A stretch of DNA of 64,000 bases from Macrostomum lignano (GCA_002269645.1 NIVC01002503.1:1-64000), one strand, 5' to 3'. Shown: positions 1 to 33,500, numbered from the stretch's first letter. The notes: generated by a model not told the origin, from the sequence alone. Numbers and translations are program-made.

Positions 1-527
1 TCTCTTAGGCATGTCGCTGGCGTTGCTGACTTCAGAATCTGCGAGGAAAAGAAATCAATTAAGATAGGCTTGCTTTAGTAATCATTAATAGGCTATAAAG
101 GAACCCTTTAATAGAACGTGTTCAACTAATGCTGGGTCTGTTTTGAAAAGTCAGAACTCAGAAGTAGTCGCGATTAGAATCAGTATTGTCCCAATAAGTG
201 CGACCCAACAAATGCTGTTCAAAAAATAGGCCTGGCTGCAATGTCCCAATAAATGCCCAACAAATTACTAGCCTTGAGCTAGGCTGGGCTGTGTTTACTA
301 TTCATTGCGTTTGTAGCTTGTGTCCCAACAATGCCACTGAGATTGTTGCATTGCTTTTGAATTGTGCTCTACCAGGTAACACAAGTACTCTGGTGTACAA
401 TACTTCTACAGCAGATAATACTCACCCAAAACAGATCGTCTCTTTCTCTTTAATCCTGTGCCGGACGGGTTTTCTTCAGATCCACCAGAAAATTCACAAA
501 TAGACTGACTGCCTGCACGGATAGCTG

Positions 528-572
<45 letters not shown>

Positions 573-1179
573 GGCTTGAGCAGCAAGTGAACCAAATGAC
601 GGATGCAGCGGCGAGATCAGAATGCTCGCTGCTGATCGTTAAAGCGCATTCTTGTCTCTTAGGCATGTCGCTGGCGTTGCTGACTTCAGAATCTGCGAGG
701 AAAAGAAATCAATTAAGATAGGCTTGCTTTAGTAATCATTAATAGGCTATAAAGGAACCCTTTAATAGAACGTGTTCAACTAATGCTGGGTCTGTTTTGA
801 AAAGTCAGAACTCAGAAGTAGTCGCGATTAGAATCAGTATTGTCCCAATAAGTGCGACCCAACAAATGCTGTTCAAAAAATAGGCCTGGCTGCAATGTCC
901 CAATAAATGCCCAACAAATTACTAGCCTTGAGCTAGGCTGGGCTGTGTTTACTATTCATTGCGTTTGTAGCTTGTGTCCCAACAATGCCACTGAGATTGT
1001 TGCATTGCTTTTGAATTGTGCTCTACCAAGTAACACAAGTACTCTGGTGTACAATACTTCTACAGCAGATAATACTCACCCAAAACAGATCGTCTCTTTC
1101 TCTTTAATCCTGTGCCGGACGGGTTTTCTTCAGATCCACCAGAAAATTCACAAATAGACTGACTGCCTGCACGGATAGC

Positions 1180-1221
<42 letters not shown>

Positions 1222-1823
1222 GGCTTGAGCAGCAAGTGAACCAAATGACGGATGCAGCGGCGAGATCAGAATGCTCGCTGCTGATCGTTAAAGCGCATTC
1301 TTGTCTCTTAGGCATGTCGCTGGCGTGCTGACTTCAGAATCTGCGAGGAAAAGAAATCAATTAAGATAGGCTTGCTTTAGTAATCATTAATAGGCTATAA
1401 AGGAACCCTTTAATAGAACGTGTTCAACTAATGCTGGGTCTGTTTTGAAAAGTCAGAACTCAGAAGTAGTCGCGATTAGAATCAGTATTGTCCCAATAAG
1501 TGCGACCCAACAAATGCTGTTCAAAAAATAGGCCTGGCTGCAATGTCCCAATAAATGCCCAACAAATTACTAGCCTTGAGCTAGGCTGGGCTGTGTTTAC
1601 TATTCATTGCGTTTGTAGCTTGTGTCCCAACAATGCCACTGAGATTGTTGCATTGCTTTTGAATTGTGCTCTACCAGTAACACAAGTACTCTGGTGTACA
1701 ATACTTCTACAGCAGATAATACTCCAAAACAGATCGTCTCTTTCTCTTTAATCCTGTGCCGGACGGGTTTTCTTCAGATCCACCAGAAAATTCACAAATA
1801 GACTGACTGCCTGCACGGATAGC

Positions 1824-1860
<37 letters not shown>

Positions 1861-2480
1861 GCTGCTGCTGCGGCTTGGCAGCAGCAAGTGAACCAAATGA
1901 CGGATGCAGCGGCGAGATCAGAATGCTCACTGCTGATCGTTAAAGCGCATTCTTGTCTCTTAGGCATGTCGCTGGCGTTGCTGACTTCAGAATCTGCGAG
2001 GAAAAGAAATCAATTAAGATAGGCTTGCTTTAGTAATCATTAATAGGCTATAAAGGAACCCTTTAATAGAACGTGTTCAACTAATGCTGGGTCTGTTTTG
2101 AAAAGTCAGAACTCAGAAGTAGTCGCGATTAGAATCAGTATTGTCCCAATAAGTGCGACCCAACAAATGCTGTTCAAAAAATAGGCCTGGCTGCAATGTC
2201 CCAATAAATGCCCAACAAATTACTAGCCTTGAGCTAGGCTGGGCTGTGTTTACTATTCATTGCGTTTGTAGCTTGTGTCCCAACAATGCCACTGAGATTG
2301 TTGCATTGCTTTTGAATTGTGCTCTACCAAGTAACACAAGTACTCTGGTGTACAATACTTCTACAGCAGATAATACTCACCCAAAACAGATCGTCTCTTT
2401 CTCTTTAATCCTGTGCCGGACGGGTTTTCTTCAGATCCACCAGAAAATTCACAAATAGACTGACTGCCTGCACGGATAGC

Positions 2481-2517
<37 letters not shown>

Positions 2518-3138
2518 GCTGCTGCTGCGGCTTGTGAGCAGCAAGTGAACCAAATGACGGATGCAGCGGCGAGATCAGAATGCTCGCTGCTGATCGTTAA
2601 AGCGCATTCTTGTCTCTTAGGCATGTCGCTGGCGTTGCTGACTTCAGAATCTGCGAGGAAAAGAAATCAATTAAGATAGGCTTGCCTTTAGTAATCATTA
2701 ATAGGCTATAAAGGAACCCTTTAATAGAACGTGTTCAACTAATGCTGGGTCTGTTTTGAAAAGTCAGAACTCAGAAGTAGTCGCGATTAGAATCAGTATT
2801 GTCCCAATAAGTGCGACCCAACAAATGCTGTTCAAAAAATAGGCCTGGCTGCAATGTCCCAATAAATGCCCAACAAATTACTAGCCTTGAGCTAGGCTGG
2901 GCTGTGTTTACTATTCATTGCGTTTGTAGCTTGTGTCCCAACAATGCCACTGAGATTGTTGCATTGCTTTTGAATTGTGCTCTACCAAGTAACACAAGTA
3001 CTCTGGTGTACAATACTTCTACAGCAGATAATACTCACCCAAAACAGATCGTCTCTTTCTCTTTAATCCTGTGCCGGACGGGTTTTCTTCAGATCCACCA
3101 GAAAATTCACAAATAGACTGACTGCCTGCACGGATAGC

Positions 3139-3186
<48 letters not shown>

Positions 3187-3797
3187 AGCGGCTTGTGAGC
3201 AGCAAGTGAACCAAATGACGGATGCAGCGGCGAGATCAGAATGCTCGCTGCTGATCGTTAAAGCGCATTCTTGTCTCTTAGGCATGTCGCTGGCGTTGCT
3301 GACTTCAGAATCTGCGAGAAAAGAAATCAATTAAGATAGGCTTGCTTTAGTAATCATTAATAGGCTATAAAGGAACCCTTTAATAGAACGTGTTCAACTA
3401 ATGCTGGGTCTGTTTTGAAAAGTCAGAACTCAGAAGTAGTCGCGATTAGAATCAGTATTGTCCCAATAAGTGCGACCCAACAAATGCTGTTCAAAAAATA
3501 GGCCTGGCTGCAATGTCCCAATAAATGCCCAACAAATTACTAGCCTTGAGCTAGGCTGGGCTGTGTTTACTATTCATTGCGTTTGTAGCTTGTGTCCCAA
3601 CAATGCCACTGAGATTGTTGCATTGCTTTTGAATTGTGCTCTACCAAGTAACACAAGTACTCTGGTGTACAATACTTCTACAGCAGATAATACTCACCCA
3701 AAACAGATCGTCTCTTTCTCTTTAATCCTGTGCCGGACGGGTTTTCTTCAGATCCACCAGAAAATTCACAAATAGACTGACTGCCTGCACGGATAGC

Positions 3798-3848
<51 letters not shown>

Positions 3849-4452
3849 GCTTGAGCAGCAAGTGAACCAAATGACGGATGCAGCGGCGAGATCAGAATGC
3901 TCGCTGCTGATCGTTAAAGCGCATTCTTGTCTCTTAGGCATGTCGCTGGCGTTGCTGACTTCAGAATCTGCGAGGAAAAGAAATCAATTAAGATAGGCTT
4001 GCTTTAGTAATCATTAATAGGCTATAAAGGAACCCTTTAATAGAACGTGTTCAACTAATGCTGGGTCTGTTTTGAAAAGTCAGAACTCAGAAGTAGTCGC
4101 GATTAGAATCAGTATTGTCCCAATAAGTGCGACCCAACAAATGCTGTTCAAAAAATAGGCCTGGCTGCAATGTCCCAATAAATGCCCAACAAATTACTAG
4201 CCTTGAGCTAGGCTGGGCTGTGTTTACTATTCATTGCGTTTGTAGCTTGTGTCCAACAATGCCACTGAGATTGTTGCATTGCTTTTGAATTGTGCTCTAC
4301 CAAGTAACACAAGTACTCTGGTGTACAATACTTCTACAGCAGATAATACTCACCCAAAACAGATCGTCTCTTTCTCTTTAATCCTGTGCCGGACGGGTTT
4401 TCTTCAGATCCACCAGAAAATTCACAAATAGACTGACTGCCTGCACGGATAG

Positions 4453-4509
<57 letters not shown>

Positions 4510-5117
4510 GGCTTGGAGCAGCAAGTGAACCAAATGACGGATGCAGCGGCGAGATCAGAATGCTCGCTGCTGATCGTTAAAGCGCATTCTTGTCTCTTAG
4601 GCATGTCGCTGGCGTTGCTGACTTCAGAATCTGCGAGGAAAAGAAATCAATTAAGATAGGCTTGCCTTTAGTAATCATTAATAGGCTATAAAGGAACCCT
4701 TTAATAGAACGTGTTCAACTAATGCTGGGTCTGTTTTGAAAAGTCAGAACTCAGAAGTAGTCGCGATTAGAATCAGTATTGTCCCAATAAGTGCGACCCA
4801 ACAAATGCTGTTCAAAAAATAGGCCTGGCTGCAATGTCCCAATAAATGCCCAACAAATTACTAGCCTTGAGCTAGGCTGGGCTGTGTTTACTATTCATTG
4901 CGTTTGTAGCTTGTGTCCAACAATGCCACTGAGATTGTTGCATTGCTTTTGAATTGTGCTCTACCAAGTAACACAAGTACTCTGGTGTACAATACTTCTA
5001 CAGCAGATAATACTCACCCAAAACAGATCGTCTCTTTCTCTTTAATCCTGTGCCGGACGGGTTTTCTTCAGATCCACCAGAAAATTCACAAATAGACTGA
5101 CTGCCTGCACGGATAGC

Positions 5118-5165
<48 letters not shown>

Positions 5166-5778
5166 AGCGGCTTGTGAGCAGCAAGTGAACCAAATGACGG
5201 ATGCAGCGGCGAGATCAGAATGCTCGCTGCTGATCGTTAAAGCGCATTCTTGTCTCTTAGGCATGTCGCTGGCGTTGCTGACTTCAGAATCTGCGAGGAA
5301 AAGAAATCAATTAAGATAGGCTTGCCTTTAGTAATCATTAATAGGCTATAAAGGAACCCTTTAATAGAACGTGTTCAACTAATGCTGGGTCTGTTTTGAA
5401 AAGTCAGAACTCAGAAGTAGTCGCGATTAGAATCAGTATTGTCCCAATAAGTGCGACCCAACAAATGCTGTTCAAAAAATAGGCCTGGCTGCAATGTCCC
5501 AATAAATGCCCAACAAATTACTAGCCTTGAGCTAGGCTGGGCTGTGTTTACTATTCATTGCGTTTGTAGCTTGTGTCCCAACAATGCCACTGAGATTGTT
5601 GCATAGCTTTTGAATTGTGCTCTACCAAGTAACACAAGTACTCTGGTGTACAATACTTCTACAGCAGATAATACTCACCCAAAACAGATCGTCTCTTTCT
5701 CTTTAATCCTGTGCCGGACGGGTTTTCTTCAGATCCACCAGAAAATTCACAAATAGACTGACTGCCTGCACGGATAGC

Positions 5779-5843
<65 letters not shown>

Positions 5844-6523
5844 GCGGCTGGCAGCAGCAAGTGAACCAAATGACGGATGCAGCGGCGAGATCAGAATGCT
5901 CACTGCTGATCGTTAAAGCGCATTCTTGTCTCTTAGGCATGTCGCTGGCGTTGCTGACTTCAGAATCTGCGAGGAAAAGAAATCAATTAAGATAGGCTTG
6001 CCTTTAGTAATCATTAATAGGCTATAAAGGAACCCTTTAATAGAACGTGTTCAACTAATGCTGGGTCTGTTTTGAAAAGTCAGAACTCAGAAGTAGTCGC
6101 GATTAGAATCAGTATTGTCCCAATAAGTGCGACCCAACAAATGCTGTTCAAAAAATAGGCCTGGCTGCAATGTCCCAATAAATGCCCAACAAATTACTAG
6201 CCTTGAGCTAGGCTGGGCTGTGTTTACTATTCATTGCGTTTGTAGCTTGTGTCCCAACAATGCCACTGAGATTGTTGCATAGCTTTTGAATTGTGCTCTA
6301 CCAAGTAACACAAGTACTCTGGTGTACAATACTTCTACAGCAGATAATACTCACCCAAAACAGATCGTCTCTTTCTCTTTAATCCTGTGCCGGACGGGTT
6401 TTCTTCAGATCCACCAGAAAATTCACAAATAGACTGACTGCCTGCACGGATAGCGGCTGCTGCTGCTGCTGCTGCTGCGGCTTGTGAGCAGCAAGTGAAA
6501 TAAATGACGGATGCAGCGGCGAG
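1..6523. repeat. Tandem array of ~650-660 bp units (10 complete plus a partial copy running off the left edge), each with an internal (GCT)n microsatellite
   Basis: A near-identical unit recurs (ORF-track starts 198, 852, 1500, 2153, 2811, 3470 and onward). Similarity ends at ~6523, where GCGGCGAG is followed by unique sequence. Confidence 0.97.
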
Positions 6524-6540
6524 TTTGAATGCGGACGAAC
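1..6540 (-). CDS. Putative tandemly repeated coding exons of an unknown gene (exons 6540-6355, 5966-5679, 5290-5018, 4630-4354, 3967-3698, 3311-3039, 2650-2381, 1993-~1722, 1340-1080, 692-426, 38-edge)
   Basis: Each unit has acceptor TTGATTTCTTTTCCTCGCAG| and donor G|GTGAGT, both phase 1. Only the poly-Ala frame is open from acceptor to donor: (D)SEVSNASDMPKRQECALTISSEHSDLAAASVIWFTCCSQ(A)nIRAGSQSICEFSGGSEENPSGTGLKRKRRSVL. No homology recognised and no expression data. Confidence 0.6.
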
Positions 6541-9003
6541 CTGTGCGTGGGCGCACATAAGAAAAATCACTTATTGAGAAATCTGTCTGATTTGTTTGAA
6601 AACAGATTTAAATGTCGCTTTTCTAATAAATGCTTCATTGTCAATGAAATTTTACTGTACAATTAAAATACTCGTAGTTTGTCCCAACGGTGCTGCTTGT
6701 GTGAGTCAGATGGAGTATGTACAAATTTTACTCTCTCGATAGTGCCGCAGCAACTTACTTTGCCCTTAGCTGACTGCAGGCAGGCTTGCTTGTTTTAATA
6801 ATGCCCTAGAAAACAAAACACTTATTGCAATTAAGTTTCAGTTACTGGGAGTTGCAATTTTCTGAGATCCTATCTCTTTGCTGACCGCCCATCTTCCAAT
6901 CAGATGAGCTTCTTTTTTGTTGCTGACTCTGCCCTGCTTTTCTTTCGGCGTTTGCCTTTGCAGTAAGCTTTGTTTCTCGTTCTAGAATGCTGTCATTTTA
7001 TACTGTTCTTTAGTTATGTAATAATACTGCTTTGAGTAGAAAAATAATTTGACTATCGAATTATAACAGTAATATATTATATTAGTTGCCCAGCAAACTC
7101 ACATGGTATTTCTCCAAGTCTCTAGTACTGTGGGCGATGTGTCATGCGAGATTTCTTTCCTAAATGTTTTGATTGAAACTTTTAGTAAAATTTGTTCTTC
7201 CTAGAAGTGTAAATTTTGCCTACTTATGATTGCTCAACTGGCTGTTGTAAATTAATTGATAAATAAGGTGATCGTGCCGCCTCTCTTATATTTCACTGAG
7301 CTCAGAGTATTACTAGGCTGCTTATTATTTTTTTCAACGTACAAAAAATACGACATATACGAGTACGAGACAAGACTTACTTGACAATGAAGGCAAATCT
7401 GTTTGTTATAGAAGAAAACGGTAGCTTATCGATATCAACGTATCTGGAATTTTAGAAAAGTTACATATGTAAATTCCAGTTAAGTTTTTATTTAATCATA
7501 AAATTTTAAAAAGAATTTTAAATTCTACTTACATATGTGTAATGGTTCCTAGCCAAATCTTTTCATGCCAGGTCATGCATGGAAACTCTTGTGACGTGGC
7601 ACATTTTGTCTGTGTAGTGCAGGTCTCGTAAATGAATTATATTCGTTTGAACATATGCAGTACCGCCAGTACGCCGTTTGTCAAAGGGAACTTCTACATG
7701 TACCTTTCCGTTAGAATTGGCTCTTCCTCTTGTAGGCCTCAACTTCAGTGTAAACTTTATCCGACTCCCTTGCGCCCGCCTCTCCTCCCCGCTTCCCCCC
7801 GCCGCGATAGGAATGTACGCGTGGCCTGGGTAAGGGATTGCCTGGGTCTTGTACACGCTTGTCCTAACACTTCTGCACTGTACGTGGGTTTATCTTTACG
7901 ATCCAAGATAAGCAGAATTGTTTTTCAGGAAGGCCTAGTAGTTAGTTTTGGGCCAAACTAGTCATCGATTTCGACTTTACAGTGACAGTGACACGCAAAC
8001 ATGTGCTAGCAGTAGTCCATGCAGTCATCTTAAGTTTCTTGGTATCTCAGTACATTTCAGTATACCAGACGATAATTATCATAATTCTAGGAAAAATTTT
8101 GCTACATAGTATAGCTGCCCAAACCCAGGCCAATAAGGAAGTCATTTAAAGCCTTAGAGATTAAACGTTTCCCTCTAATACTCGTCCTCGGTTTTCTCGG
8201 GAAATGCAAAGTTTTTCTTTGCCCTTTATTTCTTTGCTCTAAAAGCGCTTCATAAGACTGTGAGAATTTCCACCGGAAAACTACCTCACTCAAAGTGTCA
8301 CTTTACGTTAATGGCCTCCAGTCACTAACTTGAGTCAGTTAATACCCATTCACATATGACAAATAGATTAATGCAGCTGACTGAAAACGAGAATTTCAGT
8401 TAAAATGGCCGAGGGCACAGGCGGATGTAACCTTAATTTGCCATGTTTCGTGTATAAGTGAAATTGGAAGCTAATGAATTTAGATGCAAGCTGTTTCTAT
8501 GCAAAAATCTAAATATACTAAATCTATAAGGTTTGTATGCTTGATTGTAATATTCTAAATCTTTATTAAATTATTTCATATTTTATAGTAAACACGATGC
8601 CAAATGTCAGGATCCTTTCAAGTGTCGATTGGCAGCCCTGTGGAGAACCTCTATCTGTTACTTGTAGTAGACTTTCTTGATATTGTAAGAAATATTGTAA
8701 TAAAACGAGAACTCCGATTTGAGACCCAATTGTTCTGTTGGATCAGACCATCAGTTCGCATAATTTTTTAAACTTCTTAGGACACTGCAAATCATTAGAT
8801 ACCCCGTGTTTGATTAAAAATATGAAAAAATCACATTGATTTTTGAAAGGAGAATCGAAAGACGGTTCCAATGAATATTTTTTCATTTCAATAGAATTCA
8901 TTTTTGGAAGTGTCAGGACGCACTTATTGGGCCTGGCCCAACACATTTTTGGTCCTAATAGCACGGGTCAGTTTATACACGCTTGTCCCAAGAAATGCCT
9001 AAT

Positions 9004-9155
9004 GCACACACACACACACACACACACACAGACAGACACACACACACAGACAGACAGACAGACAGACAAACACACACACACACAGACAGACAGACACACA
9101 CACACAGATAGACAGACACACAGACAGGCAGACAGACACACAGACAGACGCACAC

Positions 9156-9186
<31 letters not shown>

Positions 9187-9293
9187 CACACACAGACAGA
9201 CACACAGACAGACACACACAGACACACAGACAGACACACACAGACAGACAGACAGACAGACACACAGACACACAGACAGGCAGACAGACAGAC
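9004..9293. repeat. Compound (CA)n/(GACA)n microsatellite starting at the KCTD-exon donor
   Basis: Direct reading. On the minus strand the intron begins GTCTGTCTGTCTGCC. Confidence 0.95.
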
Positions 9294-9620
9294 CTGCAGC
9301 CGCATGGATCTCAGGTAGTTGATCACGTGACAGAACACATCGCCATCTCTGTCGATGAAGACGCGGTCGTCGCTGTCGCGCACGCCGGGCAGAAAGCGGC
9401 CGCCGAACATGGCAGCCAGCATGGAGTCGGGGTCGCGGCAAAGGGTACCCCGGGTTGTGCTGAAGTGACGACCGCCGACATTCAAGTTCACGATGTCGTT
9501 GTGGTCGCAGGCGGGTCCTCCGGCGGGTGATGGTTGAGGCTTAGGGAGGGTGGAAGAGGTGGGAGTAGGAAATCGGTTGATGTGGCAACAACCTTGATAT
9601 AGAAGCGGCTTTGAGTTCAT
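9294..9620 (-). CDS. Exon encoding a KCTD-type BTB/POZ (T1-like) domain; rest of the gene not located and 5' boundary uncertain
   Basis: [34 protein letters not shown]...[18 protein letters not shown] is the classic KCTD BTB signature. It ends at donor CAG|GTCTGT (9294). Confidence 0.85.
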
Positions 9621-10876: not shown

Positions 10877-11206
10877 GTATCAGGGGCGGGTTTAGTGGAG
10901 TATCAGGGGCGGGTTTAGTGGAGTATCAGAGGCGGGTTTAGTGGAGTATCAGGGGCGGGTTTAGTGGAGTATCAGGGGCGGGTTTAGTGGAGTATCAGGG
11001 GCGGGTTTAGTGGAGTATCAGAGGCGGGTTTAGTGGAGTATCAGAGGCGGGTTTAGTGGAGTATCAGGGGCGGGTTTAGTGGAGTATCAGAGGCGGGTTT
11101 AGTGGAGTATCAGAGGCGGGTTTAGTGGAGTATCAGAGGCGGGTTTAGTGGAGTATCAGAGGCAGGTTTAGTGGAGTATCAAGGGCGGGTTTAAGGGAGT
11201 ATCAGG
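10877..11206. repeat. 23-bp G-rich minisatellite GTATCAGGGGCGGGTTTAGTGGA, left part
   Basis: About 14 tandem copies, interrupted at 11206 by the hAT element. Confidence 0.95.
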
Positions 11207-14200
11207 CATAGTTGCCACCCAGTTTTTAAAGAAAAGTAGCGCAAGGACTAATTTTTAGCGCAGGTCTTAAAAAACTCGCATCCTTCCCACAAACCAGTTT
11301 TTCTTTTCACTATGACAGACATTTAGTAAATTCGAAAACAAAAATGGTTTACATGTACAAGGAAAATTGTTTCAAGTTGCGCAGACAAAAATAAAAAGAA
11401 GCACCTCAGACAATAAAGACTACAGCATGAAGCTTAGAGTTATAGTTACTACAAACATTCAGTAAATTTTAAGCTGATAAAATGTACAAACATAGTCATT
11501 TCTTCTTCTTCTTTGATTTTGCTTCTTCACTGTCACCATGCCGCTTGCGTAGGGCATGCTCCTCCTTATCAGCAAGTGCGAGCATGTCCTGAGCCTTCTT
11601 GCGCATTTCGTCAATCTTTGTTTGGGCCTTTGCCTGCTTTTGTTGCTTCTGCTGCTGGAGCTCTTTCTCCTTTTCAGTAACCAGTCGTCGCTGCTCCTCC
11701 AGTGCTTGCTGAAGTCGCTTCATGGCCTTTTCGTTTTGCTTAGCTCGTCGTCGCTCATCGGCTTTGCTTTTGGCTTGAAAAGCTGTGTCCAGCAGGTTAG
11801 AATCAATAGTGACCTTGGCTGGGCCAGTGCTGTTGCATTTCATCCAAACTTTCACAGCCAAAATCGAGTCCAGCGTAACTTCTCCTAGCCTATTGCGCTG
11901 CTTGGTCAAGTTGTTGGCCACCCATTTCAAAACTCGTTCACTATCTGCATTACCGTGCGGTATGCAGCAGGCAGCACGACCTAGTTTAGAAAGATGAGGA
12001 TAATCTTCAACAGAAAGCTGTGCCCAAAAAGCCTCTGGTGTCTCCTTTGCTTTCTCAGTTGGGCAGGTCAGTCGAAGCCTTGTAGCTTCCAGCCGGATAT
12101 TATCCAGCAAGTCGGCAGAAATGACTGTGCTCATAGCACGCCCAACACGTAGAATGCTGTTGTCAAAGTTGAAGTCTGATCCCAACATGTATTCAGGATC
12201 CACAAACTGAAGGCCAGAAAGCACCTTGTTGTTGAAAGGTAAGTAGGCAAACAGTCGACTAATAATTTCAGAAAAGAAGCAGCGAACTGACTTAAAAAAG
12301 CCAATCTGCTCCATCTGACGTAACCGTGCAACAGTCTCACGGGTGGCCGAGCCGATGATTAGATCTTTGTTCATTAGTTGATTGTTGCGATCAGTAGCCC
12401 TGTCAACCAGGTCTGAAAGAGAGCGGCTGTTTTCAACAACTTCACTTCGCATGAAGCAAAGAAGAATGTCACTAAAAAGCTTTTCCAGCGAAGAAGCCAA
12501 GTGGTGAACCTGAGTGCTCTCCCGCTGAAAAATTTTCTCGAATGCTTCGCATCTTGGCAGCACTTGGCTTAAGAACTGGAGCTTGGCTAGCATCTCATCA
12601 GTAAGGGCCAGCTTGATTCGTCGTGCCCGAATGTTGTCCAGTTCTGAGGCACTAGCTTTCTCAAAGTGCAGCTTCAGGGCCTCCCATTGCTCTAGAATCC
12701 GTCGAATGACGTTTAGAATCTGGAGCCAGCGAGTTTCGACTCGGCGGATGAACACGTGTTCAGCCAGGTCCAGTGCATCCTGAATCTAAAAATTTTAATT
12801 TTTGTCAGGGAAGAAAAGCACATTCAAGATTAAGCAAAGTTTAAATTCATACCTCATGGAATGCTCCGCGCCTTTTCACAAATCGGAAATAGTTATAGAC
12901 ATCATCCATCAGTCCTTCAGCCTCGCCAGTGCTGTCAAATGCCTTAGTTGCATATTGAACACTATTATGTACATGATGGAGACTGCAGCCTCCAACATTA
13001 ATAAGCTGCGGCATAGCATCTTTCAGCTTGGTGAGAAGTCCATTGTGGATGCCTGAAATGTGAAAGGTGAATTATTTTAGGGACAGGATCTTTGTCAACA
13101 AGGATTACTCATCAAGCTATCTCGCATACCTCTCATTGCATTGCAGGAATCTGTCATCACGGAAATAACATTCCTTGCAGGCAATTTGGCTTGGGATAGC
13201 AACGACAAAACTGTGTCCTTCATATTTGACGCCGATGAATTTTTAAGCTCCTCTGAACCAATGTAGACAAGAATTGCCTTCTGCCTTTCAATGCAGAAAG
13301 TGCGGGCCAGTAAAACCAGCCAGCAGCGGTCACGTTTCGTGCCCTCATCAAGCAGAATTGAAAAGGGAGAGTCACGAAGGCTCTTAAACATTTCCTCCTT
13401 AGCATGTGGGCAAGTGCATCAGTGACCAGGTACGTTGTCTTGGTTCTTCCACATGAAAAGTTCTGAGCAACACTGCTATCAGGAATAGCAACAGGCAGTG
13501 TTTCAGAAATTTCGTCCATAGTTTTGAATGATAGGTCTTTCCGAACAACAAGCAGTCCGAATCGTAGGCTCGCCGCCATGGTCTGTTGGGGCAAAGATGC
13601 CTCTGCCTCCACTTTTTTTAGTTGTTGGTTCTCAGATGGAGTGATTGGGAAAAAAGCATTGATTTTTTGCTGACTGTAAGCAGCAACCATAGCCCGAGAA
13701 AGAGCCTTGTGCTTTGCACCATCAGCATGTTGTCGCAAAGCAGCAATGCCATGTTGACGAAAATTTACCCCACGGTTGCACAATCTACATGTGGCTTCAT
13801 CGTCATTGTCGTCGTCTTTCTGGCACCATCGTGATATTTTGACCCCAGAATGGTCATGTTCAGATAACCAGGTAGCATTACACTTCGTTTTTCGATCAGT
13901 GGGCATTAGAATGTGGCTGAAATGTGACTTGAATTTTATACGAGCGTAGTACCTAAACTACTACTTCCCTAGATTCCCACTTTAGTACTTTCACTACTTA
14001 TACATATAATATACTTATACATAGACTTATACGTATAAGTTTATAGAGAAAATTACAAAATTAATGACCCAAAAAGTATAGGAACAAGAATCATTTTGAC
14101 CTTTCTTACTTTATTTAGAATGACTTTTTAGCAATAGAAGTAAAAAATAGACAAGCAAAAAAATAATTACTTTTTTGAGCAGAACCAAATAAAATTGAGC

Positions 14201-14262
14201 ATTTGAGCAGCTTAAATTTTTTTGAGCAATTGCTCAAAATTTGAGCAGGGGTGGCAACTATG
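11207..14262 (-). mobile_element. Full-length hAT-superfamily DNA transposon (3056 bp)
   Basis: Perfect 14-bp TIRs CATAGTTGCCACCC (11207-11220) and GGGTGGCAACTATG (14249-14262). 8-bp TSD GTATCAGG (11199-11206, 14263-14270). Subterminal TTGAGCA repeats at ~14170-14247. Internal transposase gene. Confidence 0.95.
11496..13906 (-). CDS. hAT transposase, 3 exons (13906-13130, 13052-12853, 12785-11496), ~755 aa if one missing base near 13408 is restored
   Basis: N-terminal Cys/His zinc finger (CRLC...HADGAKH), catalytic-type motifs LLDE, MTDS, CSLH, TRW and PHGNADSERV, and C-terminal KSKKKKK. Both GT-AG introns are phase-compatible. There is a single -1 shift in GCCCACAT (DALA-HML vs DALAPHAKEEMFK). 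Confidence 0.9.
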
Positions 14263-14885
14263 GTATCAGGGGCGGTTTTCAAGTAAGTGTCAGGGGCGGG
14301 TTTAGTGGAGTATCAGAGGCGGGTTTAGTGGAGTATCAGAGGCGGGTTTAGTGGAGTATCAGAGGCGGGTTTAGTGGAGTATCAGAGGCGGATTTAGTGG
14401 AGTATCAGAGGCAGGTTAAGTGGAGTATCAGGGGCGGGTTTAGTAAAGTATCAGGGGCGGGTTTAAGGGAGTATCAGGGGCGGTTTTAGAGGAGTATCAG
14501 AGGGGGGGGGGTTAGTGGAGCATCAGGCGCGAGTTTAGGAAATATAAGGGGCGGGTTTAGTCGAGTATCAGGGGCGGGTTTAGGGAAGTATCAGGGGCGG
14601 GTTTAGTGGAGTATCAGGGGCGGGTTTAGTGGAGTATCAGGGGCGGGTTTAGTGGAGTATCAGGGGCGGGTTTATTGGAGTATCAGGGGCGGGTTTAGTC
14701 GAGTATCAGGGGCGGGTTTATTGGAGTATCAGGGGCGGGTTTAGTGGAGTATCAGGGGCGGGTTTAGTGGAGTATCAGGGGCGGGTTTAGTGGAGTATCA
14801 GGGGCGGGTTTAGTGGAGTATCAGGGGCGGGTTTATTGGAGTATCAGGGGGGGTTTAGTGGAGTATCAGGGTGGGTTTAGTGGGG
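14263..14885. repeat. 23-bp G-rich minisatellite, right part
   Basis: Same unit as 10877-11206, resuming directly after the TSD. Confidence 0.95.
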
Positions 14886-16844: not shown

Positions 16845-19800
16845 TCAAGAGGCGGCGCCGGCGCGTCGGCTTCGCTGGATGAGCGCCGTTTCGACAGCGG
16901 CGGCGGCGCCAACTGGTTCGTCGTCTGGTTGGCGTTGGCTCTCTCGGAGGATGAGGTCAGCCAGTCGGCCGACTTCGCCTCGGTCAGCCAGGAGGGCGTC
17001 GCGGGCGCGGTCCAGGGCGCGCGAGTGCTCGATGTGGCGCTTCTGCCTGCGAGGGGAGATGGGGTGGAGATTAGTTTATAATTAGTTGTCGCAGGAGGGC
17101 CGAGGAAATTCTGCCCATTCTGCTGTCTACAGTACACTAATAACAGGCAGAATACAGTAAGAAACAGACAATACGGTAAAAAACCGGCAGAATACAGTAA
17201 GAAACAGACAGAATACAGTAAAAAACAGGCAGCATACAGTAAAAAACAGACAGAATACAGTAAGAAACAGACAATACAGTAAGAAACAGGCAGCATACAG
17301 TAAAAAACAGACAGAATACAGTAAGAAACAGACAATACAGTAAGAAACAGGCAGCATACAGTAAAAAACAGACAGAATACAGTAAGAAACAGACAATACA
17401 GTAAGAAACAGGCAGCATACAGTAAGAAACAGGCACAAAAACAGTAGAGAATTGCAGCGCAAAACCAAGCGACACTAACTGGGCCAGCAGAGCCGCCTCG
17501 CCTCGCCGTCGCTTCGCCCTGAACGCCGCAGATTCGGCCGCCTGTTTCTGGGTCTCGGCGGCCAAAAATTCAGCGTAGGTCGGCGCGTCCATCGCTGGCA
17601 GGTCGCGCAGTTCAAGCCGGCCGACTAGGGCATCGGTGCCGGCCTCGGACAGCAGACGATGCCGGGAGAGAAACTGGCGCACCATTGGCGACCGGCCGTT
17701 TGTGTTGAATACCAAATGCCGTTCGGTTGGGCCCGGGCCAAGGGGATGCGACTCCTGCTTGGAGGGTTTCGTATAGAAGATGGGGGTATATCATGTTTTT
17801 TTCCTGTTAAATGTGCATTCAAAACAGATTTGGAAGTGCCATTTTTCGGTTTTAGTTTAGTTTAGCAGTTTATGCTACTGTTAGTAGGCTTCCGTAGCTA
17901 AAATAGTTAAGATTTAGCCTTTTAAATCTTTTAGCTAAATAGTTAGGATTAGCTTTGTAGCTAACAAAGCTGCAGTTTTATCATAGGTTTAGGGCCAAAA
18001 TAGTTAAAATTTAGCATTTTATACTACTGTTAGTAGGTTTCAGTAGCTTCAAAAGTCATCTGTAACAGATTGTGATTGTAAGTGATGTGATACAAAGCAT
18101 AGATGGCATCAAAGCCATGGCATCAAAGCCCTATCCCACCTTTTTGCCTGTCGACAGCCGCGCAGCATTGGGAGACTTCGTCGACAAACTGGATTTAGCT
18201 AGCGATCGAGCGGTCAAGTTTGTTGCCTTTGAGCGACTCTGAAGCAGCCCCTGCTGCTGCTGAAGACTGACAGCAGACGTTGTGGCTTCCCCTGCTATTT
18301 GCGTGGCTGAGTCGTTTGGAGCTGAGCTGCCGCTCTGAACAAGAGCCTTGTCCAGCAGCTGGAAGGTGTCTGCCGGCGGGGGAGTGCGGTGGATTGCTAG
18401 TCTAGACAACATCATGAAGGATAAAGGAATAGAATGGATTGCTAGTCTAGACAACATCATGAAGGATGAAGGAATAGAATGGATTGCTAATCTAGCCAAC
18501 ATCATGAAGGATGAAGGAATAGAATGGATTGCTAATCTAGCCAACATCATGATGGATGAAAGAATAGAATGGATTGCTAATCTAGCCAACATCATGAAGG
18601 ATGAAGGAATATAATGGATTGCTAATCTAGCCAACATCATGATGGATGAAGGAATAGAATGGATTGCTAATCTAGCCAACATCATAAAGGATGAAGGAAT
18701 AGAATGGATTGCTAATCTAGCCAACATCATAAAGGATGAAGGAATAGAATGGATTGCTAATCTAGCCAACATCATAAAGGATGAAGGAATAGAATGGATT
18801 GCTAATCTAGCCAACATCATGAAGGATGAAGGAATATAATGGATTGCTAATCTAGCCAACATCATGAAGGATGAAGGAATAGAATGGATTGCTAATCTAG
18901 CCAACATCATAAAGGATGAAGGAATAGAATGGATTGCTAATCTAGCCAACATCATAAAGGATGAAGGAATAGAATGGATTGCTAATCTAGCCAACATCAT
19001 GATGGATGAAGGAATAGAATGGATTGCTAATCTAGACAACATCATGATGGATGAAGGAATAGAATGGATTGCTAATCTAGCCAACATCATGAAGGATGAA
19101 GGAATAGAATGGATTGCTAATCTAGCCAACATCATGATGGATGAAGGAATAGAATGGATTGCTAATCTAGCCAACATCATGATGGATGAAGGAATAGAAT
19201 GGATTGCTAATCTACCCAACATCATGAAGGATGAAGGAATAGAATGGATTGCTAATCTAGCCAACATCATGAAGGATAAAGGAATAGAATGGATTGCTAA
19301 TCTAGCCAACATCATGATGGATGAAGGAATAGAATGGATTGCTAATCTAGCCAACATCATGAAGGATAAAGGAATAGAATGGATTGCTAATCTAGCCAAC
19401 ATCATGAAGGATGAAGGAATAGAATGGATTGCTAATCTAGCCAACATCATGAAGGATAAAGGAATAGAATGGATTGCTAATCTAGCCAACATCATGAAGG
19501 ATGAAGGAATATAATGGATTGCTAATCTAGCCAACATCATGAAGGATGAAGGAATATAATGGATTGCTAATCTAGCCAAAATCATGATAGATGAAGGAAT
19601 ACAATGGATTGCTAATCTAGCCAACATCATGAAGGATGAAGGAATATAATGGATTGCTAATCTAGCCAACATCATGAAGGATGAAGGAATATAATGGATT
19701 GCTAATCTAGCCAACATCATGAAGGATGAAGGAATAGATAGAATGGATTGCTAGTCTAATCAACATCATGATGGATGAAATTATTTGCATATTTGTGTAA

Positions 19801-30563: not shown

Positions 30564-33500
30564 TTAGTCTTCGGCAGTGTATCCGCTGTTAACGTTGCTC
30601 TTATCATCTTGCTCGGTTAATGGGGCCGGTTTAGAAGTTGGCGGCACCATTGGCAGCTCACTGTCGGGGTCCGCACTGAATGGCTGATAGCGCATGGCCA
30701 ATAGGATGAAGACAAACACGTTCAGCAGCATTAGCAGGGCGAACATCAGGAACTCGTAGCTCTGATAGGGTATAATTCTAACCTCGCTTACAACCATAAC
30801 AACCACGTTGCCAATAGCAACGCACATTAGCCAGAGCGCTTGGACAAGAGATTTCATGGAGGCTGGCGCTTCAGCATAGGAGAGAGCCAGGCCGGAGATG
30901 GAGAAGAGCACTTCAGCGATTGAGATTAGCACGTACTGCGGCACCTGCCACATCATTGAGACGGAATTAGCTCGGACCTCTTCGATTAGGAAGGAGCGAA
31001 TTTTACCGTCAGAGTCTTCGTAGAGAACCAGAGAGATAATCTGGCCGTCTGCGGGCGGGGGCGGGCGGCTGCGCGATAGTTAATGCGCTACGAGCGTAAT
31101 TAGGGGAGATGGGAATCAGGTACAGATCGAAGGGACCGCGAGGAGTTAGGGAAAACAAAAGCGGAAAGAGAGTGGGAGAGAGCGGACAGAGTGGGAGAGA
31201 GCGGAGAGTGGGAGAGAGCGGACAGAGTGGGAGAGAGCGGAGAGTGGGAGAGAGCGGACAGAGTGGGAGAGAGCGGAGAGTGGGAGAGAGCGGACAGAGT
31301 GGAAGAGAGCGGACGGAGTGGGAGAGAGCGGACAGAGTGGAAGAGAGCGGACAGAGTGGGAGAGAGCGGACAGAGTGGGAGAGAGCGGACAGAGTGGGAG
31401 AGAGCGGAAAGAGTGGGAGAGAGCGGGGAGAGTGAGAGAGTGGAAGAGCGGAGAGTGGGAGAGAGCGGACAGAGCGGGGGAGAGCGGACAGAGCGGGGGA
31501 GAGAGCGGACAGAGTGGGAGAGAGAGTGGAAGAGCGGAGAGGTGAGAGTAGAAACGGAAAGACCAGACCAAGTCAAACTGTAACAATCCAACAATAAAGC
31601 ATGAAATCTTTAATGAACTTGTCAAACAGAAAATTGCAAACATTTCTAAATTCCAAAATACCAGTGCCAAAGTGGAACCCTGACAGTATGCATGTGAAAT
31701 TGCATATACTAGTAAAATTATGAATTTCCGCTGTCAAAAAGTTACAAGCCACGCCCAAACTGCCTCTCTTAGCATCTCTCACTCAGCCTAGATTATTTAC
31801 ACACACACACACACACACACTCTCACACACTGTTGAGATACCCCTGAACACGCTATTCTCATTGCTCGTGCTCAGCTGCCATACATATAGTATTTAAGAA
31901 TTTTCTGTGTACATTATTATTATAATGTTTTATAGCTAAATTTAACCCATGGTCAACAATAGCACTGGTTTGGTCAGGCTTCAAATGTATGAACTATTTT
32001 ATTTCAAAAAAACTATTAACAAGAATGGTTTCGTAATAAAAAAGTTTGCTAATAATTTAGTTAAAGCTCGAGCATCCTTTTTAAAGGACTATATAGAACT
32101 ATTGTAGCGTCGAAAATTGATGTTAAACACTTCTCTTGACGGGCTGTCTATAATGAAATAGTTTATGGTACACTAGTCTATCGTACAATAGTCTATGGTA
32201 CGATAGTCTATGGTACAATAGTCTATCGTACAATAGTCTATGGTACGATAGTCTATGGTACGATAGTCTATGGTACAATAGTCTATGGTACGATAGTCTA
32301 TGGTACGATAGTCTATGGTACGATAGTCTATGGTACGATAGTCTATGGTACGATAGTCTATGGTACGATAGTCTATGGTACAAATAGTTTGTTACAATAG
32401 TCTATGGTTAAAAATTCTATTTCATTTTATTTTTTTACCCTATCTAAAGCGAGTTTGCTTCTTTGCCAGACTAATAAAAAATTGACCAAGCCCTGTATCA
32501 ACTTTCTATTCTGGTTTAGTATGCCTAAAAATTCCAAAAAATGTAAGAAATCTGAAAGAAACTTCTTCCATACTTTCTGGAAGTATCTCGGAAGCGGACA
32601 ACATTGCCTTCTTATTTTTTCTAACATTTTTAATATCCGCTTAGGATCGCGTGCGAGATTAACTGGGGTTGGGGGTAAACTCACTCAGATTTCCTAGGGG
32701 ACCGCCTATAGGGTATATCTTGTGAAAAAGTATATTCCAATTTCAAGGTTAACTCTCTTTCGATCCAATCCCAACATTCTTATCGCCAGGAAGCAGGCTG
32801 GGTCGCTTTTAATCTGCTGTCAGCTCAACTCAAGCAGTTAAAATCTTTGTTGTGAAAATGTAATTTAAAAATTCGTGATTTTAAGAAGCTATTTTTTACC
32901 TATTCTATGGCCAAGATATTTCCACTCATCATTAGTCTATGGCCAAGATATCTCCGCTCACCATTAGTCTATGGCCAAGATATCTCCACTCATCATTAGT
33001 CTATGGCCAAGATATCTCCACTCATCATTAGTCTATGGCCAAGATATCTCCACTCATCATTAGTCTATGGCCAAGATATCTCCACTCATCATTAGTCTAT
33101 GGCCAAGATATCTCCACTCACCATTAGTCTATGGCCAAGATATCTCCACTCATCATTAGTCTATGGCCAAGATATCTCCACTCATCATTAGTCTATGGCC
33201 AAGATATCTCCACTCACCATTAGTCTATGGCCAAGATATCTCCACTCATCATTAGTCTATGGCCAAGATATCTCCACTCATCATTAGTCTATGACCAAGA
33301 TATTTCCACTCATCATTAGTCTATGGCCAAGATATCTCCACTCATCATTAGTCTATGGCCAAGATATTTCCACTCACCATTAGTCTATGGCCAAGATATT
33401 TCCACTCACCATTAGTCTATGGCCAAGATATCTCCACTCATCATTAGTCTATGGCCAAGATATCTCCACTCACCATTAGTCTATGGCCAAGATATCTCCA

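What the first reader, a model, noticed from the sequence alone, without database searches (positions are those of the whole stretch)
1..6540. The 655-bp satellite looks like a tandem array of spliceable, in-frame poly-Ala exons
Seen: on the minus strand every unit has a polypyrimidine acceptor (TTTCTTTTCCTCGCAG|), ~270 nt of sequence, a consensus donor (G|GTGAGT) and a ~390-nt intron. Acceptor and donor are both phase 1. In internal copies the other two frames hit stops soon after the acceptor, so only the poly-Ala frame is open. Six of ten complete copies are intact. Splicing them would build a protein of at least 10 repeats of ~90 aa, each with a Cys-Cys motif, a poly-Ala tract and a KRKRR basic motif (possible NLS). 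Inference: this is either a repeat-expanded protein or a bank of skippable or mutually exclusive exons; symmetric phase lets any subset be used. An array in which each exon carries its own variable microsatellite is a two-level diversity generator that I do not recognise from any described gene.
Basis: partly seen in the sequence, partly recalled or inferred. Interest (0 to 1): 0.85.

Follow-up and report, generated by a model that had tools for sequence, protein, structure and literature searches.

The report
Mobile element carrying spliced exon array
The 655-bp "satellite" is the inner repeat array of a young mobile element (about 45 copies) in the flatworm Macrostomum lignano; each repeat really is an exon plus an intron that public gene models splice as predicted, but nothing shows that the poly-alanine protein is under selection or works as a diversity generator.

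Summary
On the minus strand, 1-6540 holds one partial and nine complete ~655-bp units, plus one cut by the contig start. Each unit has a pyrimidine-tract/CAG acceptor, a 261-288-nt phase-1/phase-1 exon open only in the poly-Ala frame, and a G|GTGAGT donor. One donor is deleted and two frames are broken.

The splicing inference is supported. The genome is Macrostomum lignano Mlig_3_7. UniProt and RNA-seq-based GenBank gene models join consecutive units at exactly the predicted junction (...KRKRRSVL|DSEVS...). No intron-less copy of that junction exists in the genome.

The array is not a single gene. It is the core of a 6-21 kb element present about 45 times (at least 554 units). The element has 12-bp subterminal inverted repeats. 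It sits inside (GT)n microsatellites, and two paralogous empty sites still carry the uninterrupted (GT)n.

In 118 units, exons vary as much as introns. Exon substitutions are mostly non-synonymous and 17% of units are frame-broken. Only 2 of 6 complete elements keep the full ORF. No homologue was found outside this species.

The best reading is a gene-like, spliced, mobile macrosatellite cassette with unproven coding function. The "two-level diversity generator" idea is unsupported.

The parts
9008..9293 (.). (CTGT)n/(GT)n microsatellite abutting the 5' end of the element. It is the occupied remnant of the microsatellite target.
   Evidence: TRF; sequence. Other copies carry (GT)n here and both empty sites carry (GT)n.
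8996..9007 (-). 5' subterminal inverted repeat, GTGCATTAGGCA. Its 3' partner, TGCCTCGTGCAC, lies off this contig.
   Evidence: The 12-mers match 10/12 in inverted orientation, at offsets 3 and 0 from the two ends. The 28-nt 5' terminus is found 42 times in the genome, including C2503:8980-9007.
6541..9007 (-). 5' arm of the element (~2.5 kb). It has no ORF of 130 aa or more and no Pfam, tRNA or Rfam match.
   Evidence: It is 97-99% identical to the 5' arms at C1001, C271, C3919, C868, C2610 and C3645, while the sequence beyond differs.
6355..6540 (-). First exon, a partial diverged unit behind the acceptor ...CGCACAG|GTTCGTCC. It is phase 1 in the poly-Ala frame and contains no ATG.
   Evidence: Sequence. 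The ML2 model P0029 starts exactly at this base (VRPHSNS...).
5967..6354 (-). Intron 1 (GTGAGT...CTCGCAG). The same ~388-nt intron recurs between all exons.
5679..5966 (-). Exon, intact, 288 nt, (GCA)n tract of 69 nt.
5018..5290 (-). Exon, intact, 273 nt.
4354..4630 (-). Exon, 277 nt, frameshifted at the microsatellite (runs into the poly-Gln frame and stops).
3698..3967 (-). Exon, intact, 270 nt.
3039..3311 (-). Exon, intact, 273 nt (acceptor tract variant ATTTCTTTTCTCGCAG).
2381..2650 (-). Exon, intact, 270 nt.
1724..1993 (-). Exon with an open frame whose donor is destroyed by a 3-bp deletion (GTTTTGG|AGTATT).
1080..1340 (-). Exon, 261 nt, with an early frameshift and an in-frame stop.
426..692 (-). 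Exon, open, 267 nt. The repeat tract reads poly-Ser because of two compensating shifts.
1..38 (-). Start of a further exon, cut by the contig end. The rest of the array and the 3' arm (38-bp minisatellite, hairpin, 3' subTIR, (GT)n) are missing here.
   Evidence: The 3' arm is seen in other copies.

Best explanation
The array is the core of a young, species-specific mobile element of Macrostomum lignano. The element is laid out as (GT)n | 12-bp subTIR | 1.8-2.5 kb 5' arm | first partial exon | N x [~385-nt intron + 237-300-nt exon] | last exon running into a ~1.1 kb 3' arm (38-bp minisatellite, hairpin, subTIR) | (GT)n. About 45 copies of 5.6-21 kb sit at different places, and each lies inside a (GT)n microsatellite.

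The element is a self-contained, gene-like transcription unit. Read-through RNA is cis-spliced at every monomer, which removes the spacer and joins the exons in phase 1. The first AUG of the spliced RNA (MPKRQ, in exon 2) opens the only open frame, the poly-Ala frame. That frame ends at a TAA in the last exon, 123 nt before an AATAAA.

Shown: the anatomy, the dispersal, the insertion into (GT)n, and the spliced junction in public models. Inferred: the monomer descends from a real exon plus intron that was tandemly amplified. The repeat protein (a hydrophobic Ala/Cys stretch plus an RKRR site in each repeat) is at present an unconstrained and possibly untranslated product. Integration may use homology with (GT)n, for example through a circular or template-switch intermediate.
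For: Organism: assembly size and scaffold number match Mlig_3_7, and the UniRef names give TaxID 282301.

Splicing: proteins P0010, P0012, P0014, P0013 and P0016 join repeats at SVL|D/ASEVS. Genomic matches to P0013 lie exon by exon, ~636 bp apart. The A-variant acceptor CAG|CTTCTG occurs 137 times. The GenBank annotation derives from STAR/StringTie RNA-seq models. The spliced junction is absent from the genome even allowing 2 mismatches. Only 4/20,000 shuffled monomers are exon-like.

Dispersal: 145 or more units at 12 loci. 554 acceptor contexts genome-wide. 42 5' ends and 47 3' ends, paired on the same contigs 5.6-21 kb apart. Arms are conserved at 97-99% while flanks are unrelated.

Insertion: the concatenated flanks of the C385 and C3919 copies match contiguously at C2069 and C1449. 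Those empty sites read ...GAGG(GT)5GGCGACC... and ...AAGG(TG)~15CA....

Gene-like ends: a 933-aa ORF through 13 exons (C868) and a 333-aa ORF through 5 exons (C385), with TAA followed by AATAAA 123 nt later.

No constraint on the frame: variable sites are 14/388 in the intron and 13/208 in the exon (Fisher p=0.15). Exon substitutions run about 12 non-synonymous to 2 synonymous. Indel types number 24 in the intron and 10 in the exon, and 9 of those 10 shift the frame. 20 of 118 units are broken, and 4 of 6 complete elements have a truncated ORF.

No relatives outside M. lignano among 1.8 billion representative proteins. No Pfam domain. AlphaFold mean pLDDT is 42.
Against: I could not see raw RNA-seq reads, so splicing rests on gene models. 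The UniProt/ML2 models may be partly ab initio. They mix frames chaotically.

The family is so young (termini identical in 39/42 and 41/47 copies) that the selection tests have little power. Some 1-bp indels may be assembly errors from the long-read assembly.

Several gene-like features argue that a protein may be made. These are the only-open symmetric frame, the first AUG lying in that frame, the stop followed by a poly(A) signal, and fully open 933-aa and 333-aa ORFs in two of six complete elements.

The transposition mechanism and the element class are unresolved. The subTIR match is only 10/12, and 6% of shuffles reach that score somewhere in the 60-bp ends. No autonomous partner was found.
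Confidence: 0.7

Rival explanations
1. A functional, recently expanded protein-coding gene family. Each cassette would encode a repeat polyprotein with 4-30 repeats of ~79-96 aa, each carrying a hydrophobic Ala/Cys segment and an RKRR furin-type site. The product would be made in quantity or cut into peptides. Array length and poly-Ala length would then give product variation. The mobile-element-like spread would be how the family grew.
For: Only the poly-Ala frame is open, and the exons are symmetric and divisible by 3. The first AUG of the spliced RNA is in that frame, and the ORF ends in the last exon with AATAAA 123 nt later. Complete ORFs of 933 and 333 aa exist. The arrays at C3156, C3645, C868 and C906 have 49 of 49 units intact. 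TransDecoder-called ORFs passed the GenBank filters. UniProt labels some models 'Secreted protein'. The exon-like pattern is improbable by chance.
Against: There is no sign of purifying selection. The exon is at least as variable as the intron, non-synonymous changes greatly outnumber synonymous ones, and exon indels shift the frame. 17% of units and 4 of 6 complete elements are broken. There is no homologue outside the species, no domain and no confident fold. A hydrophobic segment every ~80 aa is odd for a secreted polyprotein. The hydropathy peak is 1.51, which is borderline.
Confidence: 0.22
2. An exon bank of a single host gene, here the KCTD/BTB gene whose first exon lies just upstream at 9620-9294. 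The repeats would be skipped or used in a mutually exclusive way to diversify that gene's product.
For: The element lies in sense orientation directly after the BTB exon's donor, CAG|GT at 9294/9293. Symmetric phase would allow any subset of exons to be included.
Against: The same cassette occurs about 45 times with unrelated flanks, so it does not belong to this gene. The BTB exon ends in phase 0 while the array exons need phase 1, so joining them reads ILKSATPATCLRDKNAL*. The gene models hold consecutive repeats, not one per transcript. The repeats are 97-100% identical, so choosing among them adds almost no diversity.
Confidence: 0.03
3. An ordinary untranscribed satellite whose splice-like motifs and open frame are coincidence copied ten times.
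For: The monomers are near-identical, so repetition of the motifs is not independent evidence. The microsatellite is open in all frames.
Against: Spliced junctions are present in public models, and the junction sequence is absent from genomic DNA. Only 4/20,000 shuffles are exon-like. The arrays are short, dispersed and embedded in a bounded element.
Confidence: 0.03

Closest known systems
Helentron-associated interspersed elements (HINE/DINE-1 type) carrying central satellite-like tandem repeats, e.g. Cg_HINE of Crassostrea gigas (PMC7492417)
   Same: Both are non-autonomous dispersed elements with two arms around a short tandem array in fixed orientation. Both have 11-12-bp subterminal inverted repeats, a palindrome near one end and an associated microsatellite. 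Both lack a target-site duplication. In both cases empty sites can be found by joining the flanks.
   Different: Monomers here are 625-680 bp rather than ~150-170 bp, and each is an exon plus intron that is spliced. The arms are kilobases long. The microsatellites lie outside the subTIRs at both ends rather than inside the left arm. Insertion is into (GT)n, not T-rich/TT sites. The palindrome precedes the 3' subTIR instead of following it. No Rep/Hel partner was found.
Copy-number-variable exon-intron tandem arrays inside genes (human LPA kringle IV-2 repeat, NBPF Olduvai units); from my own knowledge
   Same: The repeat unit contains an exon plus intron. The exons are symmetric and in frame, so the number of units sets the protein length.
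   Different: Those are single-locus host genes with folded domains under selection. This is a cassette at ~45 loci that inserts into microsatellites, has no recognisable domain and shows no detectable constraint.
SVA composite retrotransposons (PMC3287187, PMC10681720)
   Same: Both are composite non-autonomous elements with a simple repeat at the end and an internal VNTR. Both carry splice sites that are used in transcripts (exon trapping).
   Different: SVA has a poly(A) tail, target-site duplications and L1-type insertion, and its VNTR units are 35-50 bp without exon-intron structure. None of those hallmarks are present here. The retained introns and the absence of processed copies argue against spread through the spliced RNA.
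Microsatellite-targeting transposable elements (target-specific non-LTR lineages, PMC4640811; rice Micron, from my own knowledge)
   Same: Insertion is inside a microsatellite, so the copy is flanked by the same simple repeat on both sides.
   Different: There is no RT/endonuclease ORF and no 3' tail typical of LINEs. The class is unknown.
Macrosatellites with a gene per unit (D4Z4/DUX4, RS447/USP17); from my own knowledge
   Same: Large tandem units carry coding potential, and array size is variable.
   Different: In those, each unit is a whole intronless gene at one or two loci. Here each unit is one exon plus intron of a longer spliced product, and the arrays are mobile.

Membership tests
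HINE / Helentron non-autonomous element with central tandem repeats | 11-12-bp subterminal inverted repeats at both ends | tested here: inconclusive
   GTGCATTAGGCA versus rc(TGCCTCGTGCAC) match 10/12, right at both ends. However, 121/2000 shuffles reach 10/12 somewhere in the 60-bp ends.
HINE / Helentron non-autonomous element with central tandem repeats | Short palindrome following the 3' subTIR | tested here: inconclusive
   A hairpin with a 7-bp stem, TGTGCAAgtttTTGCACA, is present. It lies ~15 nt upstream of the 3' subTIR, not after it.
HINE / Helentron non-autonomous element with central tandem repeats | Microsatellite inside the left arm, between the IR and the array | tested here: not met
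   (GT)n/(CTGT)n lie outside the subTIRs at both ends, and no internal microsatellite was seen in the 5' arm.
HINE / Helentron non-autonomous element with central tandem repeats | Insertion at TT or T-rich sites without a target-site duplication | tested here: not met
   No TSD was seen, but both empty sites are (GT)n microsatellites.
HINE / Helentron non-autonomous element with central tandem repeats | A related autonomous Rep/helicase element in the genome | not tested
The arms have no ORF or Pfam hit.
Host gene with in-frame tandem exon duplication (LPA KIV-2 type) | The unit is exon plus intron, with symmetric phase and a length divisible by 3 | tested here: met
   Phase 1 at both ends. 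Intact exons are 237-291 nt long and all divisible by 3.
Host gene with in-frame tandem exon duplication (LPA KIV-2 type) | Units are spliced together in the mRNA | tested here: met
   The junction SVL|DSEVS or SVL|ASEVS appears in UniProt models and in RNA-seq-based GenBank models, and it is absent from the genome. This is indirect: no reads were seen.
Host gene with in-frame tandem exon duplication (LPA KIV-2 type) | A single heritable locus with orthologues | tested here: not met
   About 45 dispersed copies with empty paralogous sites. No homologue outside the species.
Host gene with in-frame tandem exon duplication (LPA KIV-2 type) | Purifying selection on the coding frame | tested here: not met
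   13/208 exon sites vary against 14/388 intron sites. Substitutions run about 12 non-synonymous to 2 synonymous. 9/10 exon indel types shift the frame. Power is low because the copies are so young.
Mutually exclusive exon cluster (Dscam type) | One exon of the cluster per transcript, and exons that are diverged alternatives | tested here: not met
   The models contain 2-6 consecutive repeats. The units are 97-100% identical.
Classical satellite DNA | Long, non-coding, untranscribed homogeneous arrays, not bounded by element arms | tested here: not met
   Arrays of 4-30 units are bounded by conserved arms at ~45 sites, and they are spliced in gene models.
SVA-like / LINE-mobilised composite retrotransposon | Poly(A) or LINE-type tail, target-site duplication, 5' truncations | tested here: not met
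   Both ends are precise and identical in nearly all copies. There is no A-tail and no TSD.
Microsatellite-targeting transposable element | The empty site is an uninterrupted microsatellite and the filled site has it on both sides | tested here: met
   C2069 carries (GT)5 and C1449 carries (TG)~15 at the exact insertion points. The filled copies are flanked by (GT)n on both sides.
Convertase-processed secreted polyprotein | An N-terminal signal peptide plus repeated peptides, each ended by R-X-K/R-R | tested here: inconclusive
   RKRR is present in every repeat. The hydrophobic stretch recurs in every repeat, starts ~26 aa from the Met and has a KD peak of 1.51. No signal-peptide predictor was available.

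The most novel reading that the evidence does not exclude
A mobile element whose cargo is an expandable array of symmetric, in-frame exons. In this reading it is a transposable 'macrosatellite gene' that is really translated into a furin-cleavable Ala/Cys-rich repeat polyprotein in M. lignano. Array length and poly-Ala length would vary between copies and individuals. Because it targets (GT)n microsatellites, it would spread with little harm to the host.
Probability: 0.15. Interest if true: 0.75.

Novelty: new variant of a known kind. Interest (0 to 1): 0.45.

Why it matters
Satellite arrays carried inside mobile elements are known, and so are genes with tandemly repeated exon-intron units. 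I found no description of the two combined, where every monomer of a transposon-borne array is a functioning exon plus intron and the whole element forms a gene-like transcription unit. The literature searches found nothing for M. lignano.

For M. lignano genomics, the finding explains a set of odd 'uncharacterized' or 'secreted' protein models. It also explains why several contigs break at these arrays. It gives a clean example of microsatellite-targeted insertion with readable empty sites. If the protein is real, this would be a route by which a new repeat protein can be born, amplified and spread by a mobile element.

Tried and rejected
Selection tests therefore rest on 118 units from 12 loci.
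- The look-up of encoding contigs for P0001, P0013 and P0016: nothing on record, as records of this genome are left out. I could not inspect cDNA-like contigs.
- First empty-site pattern with anchors next to the junction: no match because of mismatches. Wider anchors worked.
- Search for a chimeric KCTD-repeat protein: only distant KCTD relatives were returned, and none from this genome.
- Rfam, tRNA and Pfam scans of the arms and the repeat: nothing real. The Bd3614_N hit on P0010 has no stretch that passes on its own.
- Arm-versus-arm and arm-versus-unit BLAST: only the (GT)n ends and a shared 17-nt motif, with no LTR or long TIR.
- Literature: no paper mentions Mlig026960 or Mlig003618, or a Macrostomum satellite of this kind.
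- AlphaFold on three repeats without an alignment: pLDDT 42, which is uninformative.
- A per-nucleotide test of AG/GT conservation across all 554 units was considered and dropped. At the observed singleton rate, the expected number of mutated splice dinucleotides is about 1, so the test has no power.

Full report
**1. What is in the window**

On the minus strand of 1-6540 there is a tandem array with a period of ~655-676 bp. TRF picks up its internal (GCT)n tract every ~655-660 bp. TTTCTTTTCCTCGCAG| occurs nine times exactly (a tenth acceptor, at 3311, has a variant tract) and G|GTGAGT occurs nine times.

Nine complete exon-like segments (261-288 nt) are separated by ~388-nt spacers. A tenth segment is cut by the contig start. 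A diverged partial unit (6540-6355) opens the array behind its own acceptor...CGCACAG|.

Acceptor and donor are both phase 1, and intact segments are multiples of three. The other two frames stop after 17 codons and after 1 codon.

Four units depart from the canonical form:
- 4630-4354 is frameshifted at the microsatellite.
- 1340-1080 has an early frameshift and a stop.
- 1993-1724 has lost GTG of its donor.
- 692-426 is open but reads poly-Ser.

The ten copies are 97-100% identical, so they count as one observation. For one monomer, only 4 of 20,000 composition-matched shuffles show an acceptor, a donor, a length divisible by 3 and an open frame. The monomer therefore looks like a real exon plus intron, not a coincidence.

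**2. Whose genome, and is it spliced?**

The assembly has 764,410,778 bp in 5,269 contigs. This matches Macrostomum lignano Mlig_3_7, reported as 764 Mb in 5,270 scaffolds. The protein hits are named M. lignano, TaxID 282301.

A HMMER search of one repeat against 1.84 billion representative proteins found only M. lignano proteins, plus two weak low-complexity hits. Those proteins contain several repeats joined head to tail.
- P0010 (A0A1I8HGF2, 442 aa) and P0012 (A0A1I8GFZ0, 395 aa) read ...GLKRKRRSVL|DSEVSHASDMPKRQ... five times over.
- Two GenBank proteins, BOX15_Mlig026960g1 and BOX15_Mlig003618g1 (P0013, P0016), show SVL|ASEVS. That is the same junction in a sister subfamily whose exon starts CAG|CTTCTG, and that acceptor occurs 137 times in the genome.

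The GenBank annotation of Mlig_3_7 was made from STAR/StringTie/TACO RNA-seq models plus a de novo transcriptome, with ORFs called by TransDecoder. Genomic matches to P0013 lie exon by exon, ~636 bp apart. The joined junction sequence does not exist anywhere in the genome, even allowing two mismatches. It can therefore only arise by splicing.

I could not inspect reads, so this evidence is strong but indirect. Many ML2/UniProt models switch frames and use internal cryptic sites, namely the donor GGCA|GTCAGT and the acceptor CAGCAG|CGAGC. I would not trust those models in detail.

**3. It is not one gene: it is the core of a dispersed element**

The monomer occurs at many loci. A DNA search scored 145 units on 12 contigs. 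The acceptor context CCTCGCNNNTTCTGAAGTCAGC occurs 554 times.

Comparing 12 loci shows conserved arms around every array. The 5' arm is 1.8-2.5 kb (window 9007-6541) and the 3' arm is ~1.1 kb. Both are 97-99% identical between loci, and homology stops abruptly at (GT)n tracts, beyond which the flanks are unrelated.

The 28-nt 5' terminus occurs 42 times and the 27-nt 3' terminus 47 times. They are paired on the same contigs, in the same orientation, 5.6-21 kb apart. That gives about 45 elements with roughly 12 units each. The window copy lacks its 3' part because the contig begins inside the array.

The ends carry a 12-bp inverted match, GTGCATTAGGCA ... TGCCTCGTGCAC (10/12). A hairpin with a 7-bp stem lies near the 3' end. 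The 3' arm holds a 38-bp minisatellite. Its TTGTTGGGACA motif recurs in the intron part of each monomer, and a related TTGGGAC core recurs at the 5' terminus.

**4. It is an insertion, into (GT)n**

I joined the flanks of the C385 copy and searched the genome. The search gave a contiguous 613-bp match at C2069 for the 600-nt query (95% identity). Doing the same for the C3919 copy gave a contiguous 490-bp match at C1449 for the 453-nt query (91% identity).

Reading those sites by pattern search shows ...GGTAATTGAGG(GT)5GGCGACC... and ...GTATAAGG(TG)~15CA.... Each empty site is an uninterrupted (GT)n microsatellite exactly where the filled copy has (GT)n-element-(GT)n.

So the family inserts into (GT)n without a visible target-site duplication. 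In the window, the 5' side is the (CTGT/GT)n tract at 9293-9008.

How the element moves is not shown. No ORF of 130 aa or more and no Pfam hit lies in the arms. There is no A-tail, and there are no processed copies. One inference is integration through (GT)n homology, via a circular or template-switch intermediate. It would fit the direct (GT)n on both sides and the head-to-tail pair on C90 separated by ~50 bp.

**5. Is the reading frame kept by selection?**

I aligned 118 complete units from 12 loci.
- Variable sites: 14 of 388 in the intron against 13 of 208 in the exon outside the microsatellite (Fisher p=0.15). The exon is, if anything, the more variable.
- Exon substitutions: about 12 non-synonymous against 2 synonymous. 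The common non-synonymous ones include H/N and I/L.
- Indel types: 24 in the intron and 10 in the exon, of which 9 shift the frame.
- Broken units: 20 of 118 have a broken frame.

In-silico splicing of six complete elements gives a full ORF in two of them: C868 (13 exons, 933 aa) and C385 (5 exons, 333 aa). In the other four the ORF is truncated at exons 2-7.

This is the pattern of neutral decay. Two caveats apply. The family is so young that power is low, and some 1-bp indels may be assembly errors.

**6. Gene-like features that keep the coding rival alive**

The first exon holds no ATG. The first AUG of the spliced RNA is the in-frame MPKRQ in exon 2. The ORF ends at a TAA a few codons after the last unit diverges into the 3' arm, and AATAAA follows 123 nt later.

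Each repeat has an Ala/Cys-rich hydrophobic stretch (KD peak 1.51), Cys-Cys, poly-Ala and an RKRR site. There is no Pfam domain and no confident fold (pLDDT 42 without an alignment).

If translation instead entered the first exon at its first base, for example from an upstream start, it would read the poly-Gln frame and stop near 6379. I have not shown which start is used.

**7. Comparison with known systems**

The anatomy (two arms, central array in fixed orientation, subTIRs, a palindrome, an associated microsatellite, no TSD, recoverable empty sites) resembles Helentron-derived HINE elements that carry satellite-like repeats (PMC7492417). Three defining details fail. The microsatellite is terminal rather than internal. 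The target is (GT)n rather than TT. The palindrome is on the wrong side of the subTIR. I therefore do not file it as a HINE.

The exon-intron monomer works like the LPA KIV-2 or Olduvai arrays (own knowledge), but those are single-locus, constrained host genes. SVA shares the composite, VNTR and exon-trapping character (PMC3287187, PMC10681720) but not the retrotransposon hallmarks. Microsatellite targeting is known for other element classes (PMC4640811).

A Dscam-like exon bank is excluded. The models contain consecutive repeats, and the repeats are nearly identical.

**8. Verdict**

The framing as a unique gene and 'two-level diversity generator' does not.

The best-supported description is a young, (GT)n-targeting, non-autonomous mobile element of M. 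lignano. Its internal macrosatellite is made of spliced exon-intron monomers and forms a gene-like transcription unit. Coding function is unproven and currently looks unconstrained. I rate it a new variant of known kinds (satellites carried by mobile elements; exon-intron VNTRs) and of moderate interest.

Noticed in passing
window 9294-9620 (-): A KCTD-type BTB_2 exon (Pfam E=1.5e-14; 53-61% identical to KCTD7-like proteins of other animals) starts at the ATG at 9620 and ends at the donor CAG|GT at 9294/9293. It runs straight into the microsatellite and the element, which therefore sits in sense orientation in what would be its first intron. The phases do not match (0 against 1). The rest of the gene is off the contig.
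   Followed up: partly
window 10877-14883: A hAT-like ORF (11496-12785, minus strand; Dimer_Tnp_hAT E=4e-7) and a second ORF (13220-13957, minus strand) are bracketed by two arrays of the same 23-bp minisatellite, GTATCAGGGGCGGGTTTAGTGGA (10877-11206 and 14263-14883). This may be a hAT element or a domesticated copy with subterminal repeats.
   Followed up: no
window 30564-31079 and 39947-41137 (-): Exons of a POT/SLC15 peptide transporter (PTR2, E=1e-74 and 8e-11), separated by ~9 kb packed with minisatellites.
   Followed up: no
window 54600-57250 (+): Exons of a coiled-coil gene with a trichohyalin-plectin-homology (TPH) domain (E=3e-24). A 74-bp tandem repeat lies in one of its introns (55077-55496).
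   Followed up: no
window 12000-64000: Very high minisatellite density: 54 TRF rows in 52 kb. Many arrays are open in long artificial ORFs, for example 45 bp x 31 at 18390-19779, which gives a 539-aa ORF. This fits the 15% simple and tandem repeats reported for this genome.
   Followed up: no
G000:C90:277285-296545: Two elements lie head to tail. The 3' end of the first is at 288465 and the 5' end of the next is at 288514, so they are separated only by about one (GT)n tract.
   Followed up: no
G000:C630:418786, C1526:126155, C2092:84009, C2516:70506: Four 3'-end-like sequences share the same two mismatches (CACGTGGCCAATAAGTGCCCCGTGCAC) and have no matching 5' end. They may belong to a sister family or to an autonomous relative.
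   Followed up: no
G000:C385 flanks (C385:473434-473733 and 480101-480400): The C385 copy is inserted in a ~240-bp high-copy repeat (3,610 first-look candidates, ~87% identical). All other copies of that repeat are uninterrupted at that point.
   Followed up: partly
each monomer, 3' arm and 5' terminus (e.g. window 5590-5440; L013/L033 element 3' arm): The motif TTGTTGGGACA / ATTGGGAC recurs three or four times in each intron part, in every unit of the 38-bp minisatellite of the 3' arm, and as TTCTTGGGACA at the 5' terminus. It may be a binding site.
   Followed up: no
contig ends: C2503:1, C3156:1, C192:1, C813:140, C1277:271, C690:553, ends of C3645 and C2610: Many arrays sit at contig ends, so these arrays break the assembly. 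Copy and unit numbers given here are therefore lower bounds.
   Followed up: no
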